Source: Octopus sinensis
Taxonomy: Eukaryota
Assembly: GCF_006345805.1 (NCBI RefSeq)
Contig: NW_021827055.1
Coordinates: 1-11,199 of the forward strand
Length of the DNA: 11,199 bases
Reading direction: 5' to 3'
Shown piece after piece: positions 204 to 11,199 of this stretch. Below the pieces are notes generated by a model. The model had not been told where the DNA came from, searched no databases, and saw nothing but the letters and a program-made list of their open reading frames with translations. The position numbers and the translations under genes were made by a program. Each line of letters opens with the position of its first letter. The stretch's first letter is position 1.

Positions 204-629
204 GATATATATATATTATATATTATATATTATATTCTAATAAATTAGAGATAAACCCACTATTAGGCAAATCAAACAGTGAAAAAACTAAGCCAATACA
301 TAAAATTAATTTCAAAATATAAAAGTTAAAAATAAAAAATTATTTAAATAATTTTAAAACTTATTCAATTTATATATATATACAAATATATATATATATG
401 TATGTATGTATATTTTTAATTTATATATTATTTTATTAATTAATTATTAATTAATTAATTTATTTATTTTAATTTTTTTTACTTTATATATCAAACGTAT
501 TAAAAGTTTAATAAAAGATAAGTAGATGTAAGAATGTACATATACGTATGATATATATATATACATATATAGATTACATAATATATTATATATAGATATA
601 TATGTATGTCTATATATATATATTTATAT

Positions 630-662
<33 letters not shown>

Positions 663-735
663 GTATATAATATAATATATATATATCTATAATAATATAT
701 ATATATATATATATAATTTATACATATGTATGCAT
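204..735. repeat. AT-rich low-complexity region with degenerate (TA)n/(TATG)n tracts
   Basis: Interrupted TATATA runs at about 204-236, 371-430 and 540-735, with A-rich and T-rich spacers; almost no G/C. Confidence 0.9.
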
Positions 736-3136: not shown

Positions 3137-3449
3137 TTCAGTCATTTGACTGCGACCATTCTGGAGAATCTCTTTTCCCGAACCGCGATGTTACGGGTAC
3201 GTAAACACATCGACATCAGCTGTCAAGCGATGGTGGAGGGACAAACACACACACAGACACACACACATATCCATGCACACAAACAAACAAACACGCCAAA
3301 TACGTTGGGCTTCTTGCAGTTTCCCTAACAAAGCTTCGGTCGGACCGCGGCTATAGAAGACACTTGCCCAAGGTACCATGCAGTGGGACTGAACCCGGGA
3401 CCATGTGGTTGGTAAGCAAGTTACTTATCACACACCCACTCCTGCGCCT
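3137..3449 (-). mobile_element. tRNA-derived SINE family A, near full length with two internal deletions
   Basis: The reverse complement reads 'aggcgcaggagtgggtgtgtgataag...ccatggtcccgggttcagtcc'-like head (A/B boxes), then 'accttgggcaagtgtcttctatagc', an internal (TG)n and the tail 'ctccagaatggtcgcagtcaaatgactgaa'. It is colinear with 9488-9880. Confidence 0.9.
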
Positions 3450-3511
3450 ACACACACACATATATGTATGTATGTATGTATGTATCTATGTATGTATGCA
3501 TGTATGTATGT
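3450..3511. repeat. (CA)n + (TATG)n microsatellite spacer between two divergent SINE heads
   Basis: Direct reading of the sequence. Confidence 0.9.
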
Positions 3512-5189: not shown

Positions 5190-5268
<79 letters not shown>

Positions 5269-5315
5269 TTATCTATCGATCTCTCGCTCTCTCTCTATAT
5301 ATGCATGTGTGCATG

Positions 5316-5617: not shown

Positions 5618-5663
5618 CACACATACTCGGTCAATGCGATTTTTTAGTGCAACTTGTATTGAG

Positions 5664-6127
5664 AATAAAATGCAGAAAAGGACAAATTTCACACATATAT
5701 CGTAATCTAATTACTTTCACAGCTGTTTCAAGAGGAATAAACATAATCAATACTATAATTACATAATTCATATGAATTAATTCAAATTATATTAAGTTAA
5801 AGCAATCTTTGTCACAAATCTTCAAGAATATTCTACTGACTATTTTAGTCATAAAACGTTGCTGAAATTATATTAAATTCTTTAATTACATTTAATTCTC
5901 ACTTATATGAATACCCGCAACGGTTTATAGCTAGTACATCGGTAACATTTCTGATGATTTCGGATAACTATTGCTTTAACTTAATTAATTTTTGATTAAT
6001 TTTCATTAATTATATACTTTAATTGTGTAACTACAGAATTTAAAATGCTTATTCTTGATGAAACAGCTGTTGAAAGTAATTTAATAATAATGTATTTGTG
6101 ACAGTTGTGCTTTTTCTGCTTTTTATT
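5664..6127. repeat. Long imperfect inverted repeat (fold-back, MITE-like), arms ~215 bp, centre ~5884
   Basis: Colinear complementary blocks: 5664-5680 with 6111-6127; 5711-5744 with 6045-6079; a perfect 16 bp ATTAAGTTAAAGCAAT at 5791-5806 with 5970-5985; 5851-5862 with 5917-5928; 5872-5878 with 5890-5896. Confidence 0.9.
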
Positions 6128-6312
6128 TTAAACACAGACACGCGGATATAATAATTTTGAATTATTATATACACCTTGTAGTTTGTTTTTTTTGCCGTTT
6201 AAAGCCCGTTTAATGTATTCGGCAACCTGATGTCATCAACAGTATGGATTTAAATGCTACTGGATATACTTCAGGAATTCCTTCGTGTCCGTAGCGTTTA
6301 GAAAATATGAAA

Positions 6313-8056: not shown

Positions 8057-8149
8057 TTGTAGAATTTAATGTTAAGTATTACAAAGAATTCTTTCTATCT
8101 TGGAATATGAAATGAGAAGATCATTTCAGTGTGTTTGCCTGGCGGAAGT

Positions 8150-8170
8150 GTTTGTATGAATGTGTGTGTT

Positions 8171-8236
<66 letters not shown>

Positions 8237-8320
8237 GTATGTGTGTATGTATGTATGTATGTATGTATGTATGTATGTATGTATGTATGTATGTATGTAT
8301 GTATGTATGTGTATATATAA
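8150..8320 (+). repeat. (TG)n-(TA)n-(TATG)n microsatellite
   Basis: Direct reading. Confidence 0.95.
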
Positions 8321-9308
8321 ACATAAGCGAACTTTAAGTTTATTAGAATATGTTTGTGACATATTTCAACTTCTAATGACGAATTTACTCCAATTACCGA
8401 GAAAAAAAAATTATTCTCTCTTATGGCAGAAGGTGTGAAAACACCATATCTGCCCAGTGTTGTCCAGTTTCGGATTCCCAGACGCAGCGTTTTTGGCTCT
8501 TTTACCCTTCCTCAATACCAAAGAGATAAAAATATGGGCAAATTTGAAGCTGTAGTTCTAATTGATTTTATTATATGTTTTTTTTTTTTTAAGTAAAAAA
8601 TGGCGTTAGAATCAGTGAATCCATTTCCGGGACAAATTTAAATGTTGAAGTGAATCTAACGGTTTCAATTGCGTTTTTTAAATGGCTTATAAACATCTTC
8701 CACGCTGCAATTGTTTTTGCTTCAGCACACGATCTAAGACCAGGTCACTTGCTATCCAAGTACATCTCCATTTTTTTTAGGTCAATAGAAACTTTTATTG
8801 AGAAGAAGGTGAGAAGTTTATATTTTATTTCATTCAGCAATGTAACTACACGTGGTACGTTGGCGACGTCTTCTCCCCCCTCCTTCTTTAGACTTTTCTC
8901 TTTCTCAATTCCGACGAAGACCTATGCCCGAAAAGTTAAATTCGATCCTTTTCCCGGAACGAAAAATCAAATTGAAGGCTGGTTATTGAGGAGGTCGTTG
9001 TACTTTAATGATCATAGAAGAGATGGTTGCAAGCGATGCAAAGCAAAGCTACTGAAGTGTTTTGGGAGTAGATTACTGATAATGATTACAGAATATAGTT
9101 GTTTTACATGAAAGTGAAATTTCTTGTCAAAAACAGCCACATAAATGGTGTAAGGAAATTGAAGGAAGACGTTGAAACTTCCCCTCTGCGAGTTTGTTTT
9201 CTTCAACAGCAAAGGGAGCTATTTTTTTTAGGAGAGATAAGCTTACAAAAGCCCCTTTATTCTGTCTACCCACATAGCCTGCGCATAAACTAACTAATTG
9301 GTATGGAA

Positions 9309-9430
9309 TTTACCATTGTATAACCCATTTATTACCAGAGACTTTGATATGGATTCGGTGCAGTAGAATGGTAAAATGCACCGAATCCATATCAAAGTCT
9401 CTGGTAATAAATGGGTTATATAATGGTAAA
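9309..9430. repeat. Near-perfect inverted repeat: 54-bp stem, 14-nt loop
   Basis: 9309-9362 pairs base by base with 9377-9430: 53 Watson-Crick pairs plus one G.T (9318/9421). The loop GTAGAATGGTAAAA is 9363-9376. Confidence 0.98.
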
Positions 9431-9487
9431 AAGATTCCAAAAAATGGCAAAATATTTATATACACGTGTGTGCGTGACTGTGTAGAT

Positions 9488-9880
9488 AGGTACAGGAGTG
9501 CCTGTGTGGTAAGAAGCTTGTTTCCCAACCATATGGTTCCGGGTTCAGTCGCTTTGGTCAAATGTTTTCTACTATAGCCTCGAACCGACCAAAGACTCGT
9601 GAGTCTGATAGACGGAAACTGTAGGAAGCTTGTTGTGCGTGTGTATGTGTGTGTTTGTGTGTGTGTGTGTGTGGGGGGTGTTCTATCTGTAGTTATCCAT
9701 CGCCACCATCTGACTACTGGTGCTGGTGTATTTACGTCCCTGCAACCTAGCAGTTTGGCAAAAGCGAACGATAAAATGAGTACCAAGTTTAAAAAATAAA
9801 AGTACTGAAATTTTTCAAACTTGATGCCCCAGCATGGCCGGCCGCACTCTAATGACTGAAACTAGTAAAAGATAAAAGAT
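9488..9880 (+). mobile_element. Full-length tRNA-derived SINE family A (tRNA head, central domain, (TG)n, tail)
   Basis: A-box-like 'tgcctgtgtggtaag' and B-box 'gggttcagtc' (9541-9550), then 'gacggaaactgtaggaagc', an internal (TG)n at 9638-9672 and the tail 'ccccagcatggccg...aatgactgaaactagtaaaagataaaagat' ending in a short AAAAGAT repeat. From memory it resembles the abundant Octopus SINE with an RTE-type tail. Confidence 0.9.
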
Positions 9881-10044: not shown

Positions 10045-10449
10045 CCTTTTCTACTTTAGGCACAAGGCCCGAAATTTTTAGGGTCGAGGCCCAGTCGATT
10101 AGATCAACCCCAGTACGCAACTGGTACTTAATTTATCGAACCCGAAAGGATGAAAGGCAAAATCGACCTGGCGGAATTTGAACTCAACGTGAAGACAGAC
10201 GAAATACCTCTTCCTTTACTACCCACAAGGGGCTAAATAAACATAGAGAGAACAAACAAGGACAGACAAACGGATTAAGTCGATTACATCGACCCCAGTG
10301 CGTAACTGGTACTTAATTAATCGATCCCGAAAGGATGAAAGGCAAAGTCGATGTCGGCAGAATTTGAACTCAGAACGTAACGGCAGACAAAATACCACTA
10401 AGCATTTCGCCCGGCGTGCTAACGATTCTGCCATCTCGCCGCCTTAGTT
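10045..10449 (-). mobile_element. Dimeric tRNA-derived SINE family B with 12-bp target-site duplication
   Basis: A-box TGGCAGAATCG (10423-10433, minus) and B-box GAGTTCAAATT (10361-10371). The second monomer has only a B-box (10175-10185). Bodies 10094-10208 and 10279-10396 are direct repeats. TATTAGAAATAT flanks the element at 10033-10044 and 10450-10461. Confidence 0.92.
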
Positions 10450-10730: not shown

Positions 10731-10753
10731 ATATCTATCTATATGCCTGTCAG

Positions 10754-10808
<55 letters not shown>

Positions 10809-10833
10809 CTCTCTCTCTCTCTCTCTCTGTATG

Positions 10834-10904
<71 letters not shown>

Positions 10905-10921
10905 CTCTCTCTCTCTGTATG

Positions 10922-11004
<83 letters not shown>

Positions 11005-11013
11005 CTCTGTATG

Positions 11014-11084
<71 letters not shown>

Positions 11085-11093
11085 CTCTGTATG

Positions 11094-11127
<34 letters not shown>

Positions 11128-11199
11128 ATTAGTATATGTTTATCTATCTACGTAACTGTCTATCTTTCTATTCCTAAATCAATCAATCAATCCATCCAT
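10731..11199 (+). repeat. (TATC)n array with 80-92 bp higher-order units, ending in (TCAA)n/(TCCA)n
   Basis: Marker GTATGTC at 10829, 10917, 11009 and 11089, each preceded by a (CT)m tract. Confidence 0.95.

What the first reader, a model, noticed from the sequence alone, without database searches (positions are those of the whole stretch)
9363..9431. Template-switch footprint: the hairpin's right arm is bracketed by a 10-bp direct repeat
AATGGTAAAA occurs in the loop (9367-9376) and again at the end of the right arm (9422-9431); it is also complementary to the start of the left arm (TTTACCATT, 9309-9317). Deleting 9377-9431 restores a seamless putative ancestor (...GGTGCAGTAGAATGGTAAAA|AGATTCC...). 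This is what a single replication template switch predicts: copy 9362 back to 9309 in reverse, then re-anneal through the microhomology. The whole stem would then have arisen in one mutational step, the mechanism proposed for de novo miRNA hairpins. The alternative is a tiny MITE (9313-9426) with a TA TSD.
Basis: partly seen in the sequence, partly recalled or inferred. Interest (0 to 1): 0.75.

Follow-up and report, generated by a model that had tools for sequence, protein, structure and literature searches.

The report
Young inverted duplication forming perfect hairpin
A 54-base stretch of non-coding, repeat-rich animal DNA is followed after 14 bases by its own reverse-complement copy, and a 10-base repeat brackets that copy as a single replication template switch would leave it; the mechanism is already known and could not be proven here because no related genome was reachable.

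Summary
Arms 9309-9362 and 9377-9430 are 53/54 complementary around a 14-nt loop. AATGGTAAAA occurs exactly at 9367-9376 and 9422-9431, and removing 9377-9431 joins the sequence seamlessly. With random loops and flanks, a junction repeat of at least 10 nt arises in about 2 of 100,000 trials.

A single template switch is the most economical explanation: leave at 9376, copy 9362 back to 9309, re-anneal on AATGGTAAA.

The fit is not clean:
- The first jump has no microhomology.
- T9421 needs one extra substitution.
- The inferred ancestor already carried an improbable short inverted repeat (TGGAA-TTTACCATT / AATGGTAAA-AAGA-TTCCA) and a further motif copy at 9443-9452.

A TA-flanked MITE fits poorly, because the 10-nt repeat would cross the element boundary. 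A multi-copy palindromic element with the motif inside it cannot be excluded.

No cephalopod DNA was reachable. Every external search was empty, and so was the SINE control, so copy number and empty-site alleles remain untested.

An allele lacking exactly these 55 nt could also arise by slippage deletion between the two repeats, so polarity needs outgroups.

Nothing supports a miRNA: the stem is too long and no Rfam family reaches threshold. Most likely this is a neutral, young mutational footprint of a known kind. Interest is modest.

The parts
9304..9308 (+). Outer left pairing block TGGAA. It pairs with TTCCA at 9435-9439 across a 4-nt bulge.
   Evidence: RNA and DNA folds extend the stem through these bases. 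An outer extension of this kind has a null frequency of 1.7%.
9309..9362 (+). Left arm, the inferred source of the copy. It starts with TTTACCATT (9309-9317), the complement of the repeated motif.
   Evidence: Inverted repeat I1, 54 nt, 98% complementary. Base-by-base check.
9318..9318 (+). G that faces T9421, the only non-Watson-Crick position of the stem.
   Evidence: An exact copy would put C at 9421, and the loop copy has G at the equivalent position (9366). T therefore needs one extra substitution under any model.
9363..9376 (+). 14-nt loop GTAGAATGGTAAAA. Its last 10 nt (9367-9376) are copy 1 of the direct repeat.
   Evidence: (D3, D8).
9377..9430 (+). Right arm, the inferred inserted copy, equal to the reverse complement of 9309-9362.
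   Evidence: Deleting it together with A9431 gives 10 nt of junction microhomology, against at most 5 nt for any left-arm deletion.
9422..9431 (+). Copy 2 of the direct repeat AATGGTAAAA. It spans the last 9 nt of the right arm plus one flank base.
9431..9439 (+). Bulge AAGA (9431-9434) followed by the outer right pairing block TTCCA (9435-9439).
9443..9452 (+). A further copy of the motif with one mismatch (AATGGCAAAA), 21 nt downstream of copy 2.
   Evidence: The window has 7 matches at up to 1 mismatch against 1.7 expected, and 4 of them lie within 9308-9452.

Best explanation
This is a young, local inverted duplication made in place by one template switch during replication or repair synthesis.

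The inferred steps are as follows. A + strand was being synthesised and had reached A9376. Its 3' end left the template and resumed on the + sense strand itself, either by folding back on the nascent strand or by using the sister template. It started opposite A9362 and copied leftwards to about 9309. That added the reverse complement of 9309-9362.

The last bases made, AATGGTAAA, were identical to bases already present at 9367-9375, because the locus already held a short inverted repeat (TTTACCATT ... AATGGTAAA). The end could therefore re-anneal to the original template and continue into ...AAGATTCC.

The net result is a 55-nt insertion bracketed by the 10-nt repeat. It turned a weak quasi-palindrome into a 54-bp stem, or about 60 bp with the outer pairs, around a 14-nt loop. 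One later substitution produced T9421.

Shown: the sequence geometry and its improbability by chance. Inferred: the ancestor, the direction of the event and the mechanism.

The product is most likely a neutral mutational footprint. If transcribed it would form a long, almost perfect double-stranded RNA. As DNA it can extrude a hairpin or cruciform, and it can be lost again by slippage between the two repeats.
For: - Arms are 53/54 complementary and directly adjacent to their source, with a 14-nt spacer.
- Exact 10-nt repeat (12/13 over 13 nt) flush with both ends of the right arm. Chance frequency is 2e-5.
- The evidence is asymmetric: 10 nt of microhomology for removing the right arm against at most 5 nt for the left arm.
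- A single four-point solution exists. In ancestral coordinates, point 1 = 9376, point 2 = 9362, point 3 = 9309-9318 and point 4 = 9367-9376. This is a backward jump of the kind described for intrastrand switches in PMC8794818 and PMC10710096.
- The 54-nt inverted fragment exceeds the 15-nt minimum used in PMC10710096.
- There is no second copy of the arm in the 11.2-kb window.
- Arm GC content (35%) equals the window background (36%).
- Exact 9-nt inverted repeats at 20-80 nt spacing are rare in the complex parts of the window, with only 3 other loci. The pre-existing repeat is therefore a plausible cause of the event, not a routine coincidence.
- One mismatch in 54 implies a recent event: about 2.6 My, 95% interval 0.07-14 My, using the calibration JC 0.09 = 25 My from PMC13282606.
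Against: - There is no outgroup or second individual, so ancestor and polarity are hypothetical.
- The first jump (9376 to 9362) has no base pairing to support it: A9376 faces G9363.
- T9421 is neither the copy of G9318 nor the ancestral G9366, so an extra substitution is needed.
- The inferred ancestor already contains an inverted repeat of 9 + 2 + 5 pairs. It also has a further motif copy at 9443-9452. These hint at an older repeat-bearing structure or a multi-step history.
- Genome-wide copy number is unknown. Absence from an 11-kb window says almost nothing about a family in a gigabase-scale genome.
Confidence: 0.55

Rival explanations
1. It is one copy of a short palindromic transposable element (a MITE or similar). 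The AATGGTAAA motif would be part of the element, present at the terminus and repeated in the centre. It arrived by transposition and did not arise in place.
For: - It is a small, non-coding, almost fully palindromic unit of 122-136 nt. This resembles known palindromic MITEs such as human MADE1 (from my own knowledge).
- TA occurs at 9311-9312 and 9427-9428, and AA at 9307-9308 and 9431-9432.
- The palindrome continues outward (TGGAA / TTCCA) beyond the repeat, as the ends of an element might.
- The motif is locally over-represented, as sub-terminal binding motifs can be.
- Young DNA transposon insertions exist in Octopus vulgaris (PMC13282606).
Against: - With TA boundaries (9313-9426), the 10-nt repeat crosses from the element into the flank, which transposition does not predict. 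The chance of that is about 1e-4 or less.
- The only candidate duplications are 2 nt long, and a palindromic dinucleotide inside a palindrome is uninformative.
- No target-site duplication flanks the extended palindrome 9304-9439.
- There is no second copy in the window.
- The termini carry no recognisable superfamily signature.
- All 65 'MITE' families listed as recently active in O. vulgaris are singletons. Structure-based MITE calls may therefore themselves be local inverted duplications.
Confidence: 0.25
2. The palindrome came first and the loop was added later. A spacer-less or differently centred palindrome (...GGTGCA|TGCACC...) broke at its centre. Repair then inserted a templated 10-14-nt patch copied from the arm end 45 nt away.
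For: Removing 9363-9376 leaves a perfect, spacer-less palindrome centred on GGTGCA|TGCACC. Palindrome centres are known breakage sites, and end joining can add short templated inserts (from my own knowledge).
Against: It needs at least two events plus an unexplained origin for the palindrome. It does not explain why the patch ends flush with the arm. GTAG in the loop remains untemplated.
Confidence: 0.07
3. It is an assembly or sequencing artefact: a polymerase template-switch chimera carried into the consensus.
For: Amplification and sequencing polymerases make inverted chimeras at microhomologies (from my own knowledge). No reads were available to check.
Against: The insert is short and lies inside otherwise collinear sequence. 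It carries a mismatch to its source, which a fresh artefact would not. Consensus polishing normally removes errors confined to single reads.
Confidence: 0.03
4. Whatever its origin, it is a functional hairpin RNA gene, either a new miRNA or an endogenous siRNA precursor.
For: The hairpin is very stable on both strands. Its 14-nt loop meets the requirement for an apical loop of at least 10 nt (PMC10710096). Generic sub-threshold matches to miRNA hairpin models appear in Rfam.
Against: - The best Rfam score is 62 bits against a gathering score of 139, and all hits are generic long-hairpin matches.
- The stem is 54-60 bp and nearly perfect, against the roughly 35 bp preferred for pre-miRNAs.
- There is no evidence of expression or conservation.
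- The age is very young.
Confidence: 0.05

Closest known systems
Template-switch mutations that create hairpins and de novo miRNA stems (Monttinen, Frilander and Loytynoja 2023, PMC10710096; Monttinen and Loytynoja 2022, PMC8794818)
   Same: An adjacent sequence is copied in reverse complement in one event, giving a perfect stem. The event is described by four switch points. The backward jump is compatible with an intrastrand fold-back. A later point change introduces the first mismatch.
   Different: Those cases are inferred from parent and child nodes in a phylogeny. Here there is a single sequence and no ancestor. The fragment is 54 nt; the only fragment length I read in those papers was 28 bases for one example, and their threshold is at least 15 nt. 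The stem is too long for a canonical pre-miRNA. No expression is known.
Quasi-palindrome template-switch mutagenesis (Ripley model; cited as the origin of the idea in PMC10710096)
   Same: A pre-existing imperfect inverted repeat (TTTACCATTgTA / TAgAATGGTAAA) sits exactly at the return junction and is converted into a longer perfect palindrome.
   Different: The classical model extends the 3' end from the paired short arms. That would copy the left flank and give ...AATGGTAAA+TTCCATACC, which is not seen. Here the spacer itself was copied, and the departure junction is unpaired.
Palindromic MITEs that give miRNA hairpins (human MADE1 / miR-548 type; from my own knowledge)
   Same: A short, non-coding, almost fully palindromic unit with a small loop. 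A TA dinucleotide lies at symmetric positions.
   Different: MITEs are defined by many dispersed copies and true target-site duplications, and neither is shown here. The 10-nt repeat linking the loop to the arm end and flank is not a MITE feature.
Templated insertions of microhomology-mediated repair (polymerase theta snap-back synthesis, MMBIR; from my own knowledge)
   Same: A local inverted templated insert with microhomology at a junction.
   Different: Snap-back priming needs at least 1-2 paired bases at the 3' end, and none is available at 9376/9363.

Membership tests
Template-switch mutation (four-point model, PMC10710096 / PMC8794818) | An inverted fragment of at least 15 nt that is the reverse complement of a nearby source | tested here: met
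   54 nt, 53/54 match, with the source 14 nt upstream. The threshold is quoted.
Template-switch mutation (four-point model, PMC10710096 / PMC8794818) | One set of four switch points converts the parent sequence into the child | tested here: inconclusive
   A unique solution exists (points 9376, 9362, 9309-9318, 9367-9376) against the inferred parent. It needs one extra substitution at 9421. The parent itself is hypothetical.
Template-switch mutation (four-point model, PMC10710096 / PMC8794818) | Parent and child comparison on a phylogeny: source conserved, target absent in the parent and sister lineages, at least 5 differences explained | not testable with these tools
   No cephalopod genome is in any collection. 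Searches were empty, and the SINE control was also empty.
MITE (miniature inverted-repeat transposable element) | Terminal inverted repeats, small size, no coding capacity | tested here: met
   122-136 nt, fully palindromic apart from the loop. No Pfam match in the overlapping frames. These features are shared with any inverted duplication.
MITE (miniature inverted-repeat transposable element) | A target-site duplication flanking the element | tested here: inconclusive
   Only 2-nt candidates exist: TA for 9313-9426 and AA for 9309-9430. None flanks the extended palindrome 9304-9439. A palindromic TA inside a palindrome is expected by symmetry.
MITE (miniature inverted-repeat transposable element) | Many dispersed copies in the genome | not testable with these tools
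   There is no other copy in the 11.2-kb window, but that has almost no power. External scans were empty, and so was the positive control.
Canonical animal pre-miRNA | A stem of about 35 bp with an apical loop of at least 10 nt | tested here: not met
   The loop is 14 nt, but the stem is 54 bp of near-perfect pairing, about 60 bp with the outer block. The criterion is quoted from PMC10710096.
Canonical animal pre-miRNA | Membership of a described miRNA family | tested here: not met
   The best Rfam match is MIR5512 at 62 bits against a gathering score of 139. All matches are generic hairpin matches.
Canonical animal pre-miRNA | Small-RNA reads forming a 21-23-nt duplex with 2-nt overhangs | not testable with these tools
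   No read data. The held supplements of PMC9699675 contain no miRNA sequences: the let-7 control string was also absent.

The most novel reading that the evidence does not exclude
The hairpin is a newborn small-RNA locus in a cephalopod, made in one step by a template switch that extended a quasi-palindrome. It would already be transcribed and diced, or hyper-edited by ADAR. That would be a snapshot of the first stage of hairpin-RNA gene birth in a lineage known for miRNA expansion and heavy RNA editing.
Probability: 0.04. Interest if true: 0.7.

Novelty: new member of a known kind. Interest (0 to 1): 0.3.

Why it matters
If confirmed with outgroups, this would be a clean and unusually long (54 nt) example of a one-step template switch creating a perfect hairpin in a mollusc. 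It would show a pre-existing short inverted repeat supplying the return microhomology. That is useful as a textbook case, and as a warning that structure-based MITE finders may report such single-copy events as transposons. It does not open a new question. The mechanism and its link to hairpin birth are already published, and nothing indicates that this locus has a function.

Tried and rejected
**Retrieving orthologous or paralogous loci through proteins**
- Eight ORFs around the hairpin are not in the protein collection.
- The 158-aa ORF spanning the hairpin and SINE gave no hit.
- The 172-codon open frame at 8593-9108 gave no hit.
- The exhaustive search with the 99-aa frame 9278-9574 returned five hits. 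Three are bacterial repeat-domain proteins (Cna_B, PAS). Two are tandem-repeat proteins at about 30% identity. All five are spurious summed matches.

**Copy number by DNA scan**
- The arm 22-mer is absent from metagenome, viral and prokaryotic genome collections.
- A SINE-core control is also absent from the metagenome collection. These negatives therefore say nothing about copy number.

**Literature**
- Arm and SINE strings are absent from full texts.
- They are also absent from the octopus miRNA supplements, but those files hold no miRNA sequences.

**Coding or transposase context**
- Pfam found nothing in 10 open frames.

**Mechanisms considered and rejected**
- Classical fold-back priming from the short inverted repeat predicts AATGGTAAA+TTCCATACC, which is not seen.
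- Snap-back priming at a break after 9376 fails because the 3' end has no pairing.
- Treating the left arm as the new copy gives only 4-5 nt of microhomology and leaves GTAG unexplained.
- Hairpin-capped break or P-nucleotide-like opening predicts no loop.
- Template copying through 9304 with a later AAGA insertion needs an extra event.

**Known RNA genes**
- ARAGORN and Rfam give no tRNA and no RNA family at the locus.

Full report
**What is there.** The window is AT-rich (36% GC), full of microsatellites and dispersed repeats, and has no recognisable coding sequence. At 9309-9430 lies the only long inverted repeat in it that is made of complex sequence. The arms are 9309-9362 and 9377-9430, 54 nt each and 53/54 complementary, separated by the 14-nt loop GTAGAATGGTAAAA. 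The single mismatch is G9318 opposite T9421. That is a G:U pair on the + strand transcript and a C/A mismatch on the - strand transcript. The fold energy is -95.8 kcal/mol as RNA (z = -21) and -62.1 as DNA (z = -20).

It is correct in every coordinate.
- AATGGTAAAA is exact at 9367-9376 and 9422-9431, and the match extends to 12 of 13 nt.
- Nine of its ten bases complement TTTACCATT at 9309-9317.
- Deleting 9377-9431, or any of 11 equivalent frames, gives one and the same joined sequence.
- I kept the arms and drew the loop and right flank at random from the rest of the window. A junction repeat of 10 nt or more then appeared 8 times in 400,000 trials.
- The signal is asymmetric: removing the right arm leaves 10 nt of microhomology, and the best removal of the left arm leaves 5.

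1. The palindrome continues outward. TGGAA (9304-9308) pairs with TTCCA (9435-9439) across a 4-nt bulge, and an extension like this has a null frequency of 1.7%. The inferred ancestor would therefore already have carried TGGAA-TTTACCATT-g-TA ... TA-g-AATGGTAAA-AAGA-TTCCA, that is 16 paired positions. Exact 9-nt inverted repeats at this spacing occur at only three other places in the complex parts of the window. The ancestor's overall fold energy is nonetheless ordinary: -20 kcal/mol, at the 27th percentile of complex windows.
2. A further copy of the motif, AATGGCAAAA, lies at 9443-9452. Four of the seven near-matches in the window cluster at 9308-9452, against 1.7 expected for the whole window.
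3. Only one of the two switch junctions has homology. To start copying at A9362, the 3' end at A9376 would have to pair with G9363 and onward, and it does not.
4. T9421 is neither the complement of G9318 nor the G found at the equivalent loop position (9366). One extra substitution is therefore needed, directly next to the junction.

**Best explanation.** It is a single template switch.
- In the four-point terms of PMC8794818, point 1 = 9376, point 2 = 9362 (a backward jump, compatible with the nascent strand folding on itself), point 3 = 9309-9318 and point 4 = 9367-9376.
- No other placement of point 1 works, because the inserted sequence must begin with TGCACC.
- The return is explained by the pre-existing short inverted repeat. 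Once AATGGTAAA had been copied from the left-arm start, the 3' end matched the original template again.
- This reads as extension of a quasi-palindrome, the situation for which template switching was first proposed (PMC10710096). It is not the classical version, however. Priming from the paired short arms would have copied the left flank (AATGGTAAA+TTCCATACC), which is not observed.
- The published framework does not mention microhomology at all, so the unpaired first jump does not disqualify the event. It is still a gap in the mechanism.

**Rivals.**
- *TA-flanked MITE at 9313-9426.* It fits poorly because the 10-nt repeat would cross the element boundary into unrelated flank.
- *Palindromic element with boundaries at 9309/9430 or 9304/9439 that carries the motif both terminally and centrally.* I cannot exclude this. 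It would account for the outer pairing and the local motif clustering. It has no convincing target-site duplication and no second copy in the window, but the window is far too small to test copy number.
- *Palindrome first, centre break later.* It needs more events.
- *Artefact.* It is unlikely, because the copy already differs from its source.

**Why the question stays open.** None of the collections holds cephalopod DNA.
- ORFs of the window are not in the protein collection.
- Protein searches with frames that include a SINE covering 11.6% of the O. vulgaris genome (PMC13282606) find nothing relevant.
- The arm 22-mer is absent from the metagenome, viral and prokaryotic collections. A SINE-core control is also absent from the metagenome collection.
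It agrees with my recollection of the SINE sequences, but I could not verify it with a tool.

**A caveat for whoever runs the comparison.** The two 10-nt repeats flanking one arm of a hairpin are also the classic substrate for slippage deletion. An allele that lacks exactly 9377-9431 would be produced both by 'not yet inserted' and by 'deleted again'. Only outgroup polarity, together with copy number, separates these.

**Function.** Nothing suggests one.
- All Rfam matches are generic hairpin matches well below threshold. The best is 62 bits against a gathering score of 139.
- The stem is far longer and more perfect than the roughly 35 bp of a pre-miRNA.
- The event is young. One difference in 54 nt, with the calibration JC 0.09 = 25 My, gives about 2.6 My with a 95% interval of 0.07-14 My. 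Gene conversion between the arms would make it look younger.
- If transcribed it would be a long double-stranded RNA, which is a Dicer or ADAR substrate. That is speculation.

**Verdict.** The template-switch reading is the most economical and I put it at 0.55. A multi-copy palindromic element is at 0.25, and the remainder is spread over multi-step or artefact explanations. This is a further instance of a known mutational mechanism, and interest is modest (0.3).

Noticed in passing
window 9479-9880 (+); partial copy 3387-3456 (-): A SINE-like dispersed repeat starts about 50 nt downstream of the hairpin. Its head has a B-box-like GGTTCCGGGTTCAGTC, it carries an internal (TG)n at 9634-9673, and its tail ends ...CCAGCATGGCCGGCCGCACTCTAATGACTGAAACTAGTAAAAG. 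A second, partial copy at 82% identity lies 6 kb upstream on the other strand. ARAGORN and Rfam do not call it a tRNA.
   Followed up: partly
window 10093-10208 and 10278-10396: Two direct copies, 86-91% identical and spaced 185 nt apart, of another repeat (AGTCGATTAGATCAACCCCAGTACGCAACTGGTACTTAATT...GAAAGGATGAAAGGCAAA). This is probably two adjacent fragments of a second dispersed repeat family.
   Followed up: partly
window 5655-6136: An old, degenerate palindrome of about 480 bp, with arms 71-78% complementary in several blocks. It could be a decayed foldback or terminal-inverted-repeat element, or an ancient inverted duplication.
   Followed up: no
window 9443-9452: AATGGCAAAA is a one-mismatch copy of the bracketing repeat, 21 nt downstream of the right-arm copy. 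It makes four copies of the motif within 145 nt, against 1.7 expected in the whole window. No explanation offered so far accounts for it.
   Followed up: partly
window 551-731, 1480-1856, 5190-5282, 8149-8310, 10732-11171 and others: Microsatellite density is very high: (AT)n, (ACT)n of about 127 units, (TATC)n twice, (TGTA)n and long CT-rich tracts at 2018-2414. These produce most of the sub-threshold 'miRNA' hits in Rfam, such as mir-297 and mir-466.
   Followed up: no
literature: PMC13282606, Table 1: Among recently active Octopus vulgaris repeats, 'MITE' is listed with 65 families and 65 insertions, so every family is a singleton. Structure-based MITE callers may be reporting single-copy inverted duplications like this one as transposons.
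   Followed up: no
window 8593-9108 (+) and 9313-9861 (-): Two unusually long stop-free frames (172 and 183 codons) flank or overlap the hairpin in AT-rich DNA. Neither has any Pfam or database relative, so they are most likely chance.
   Followed up: yes
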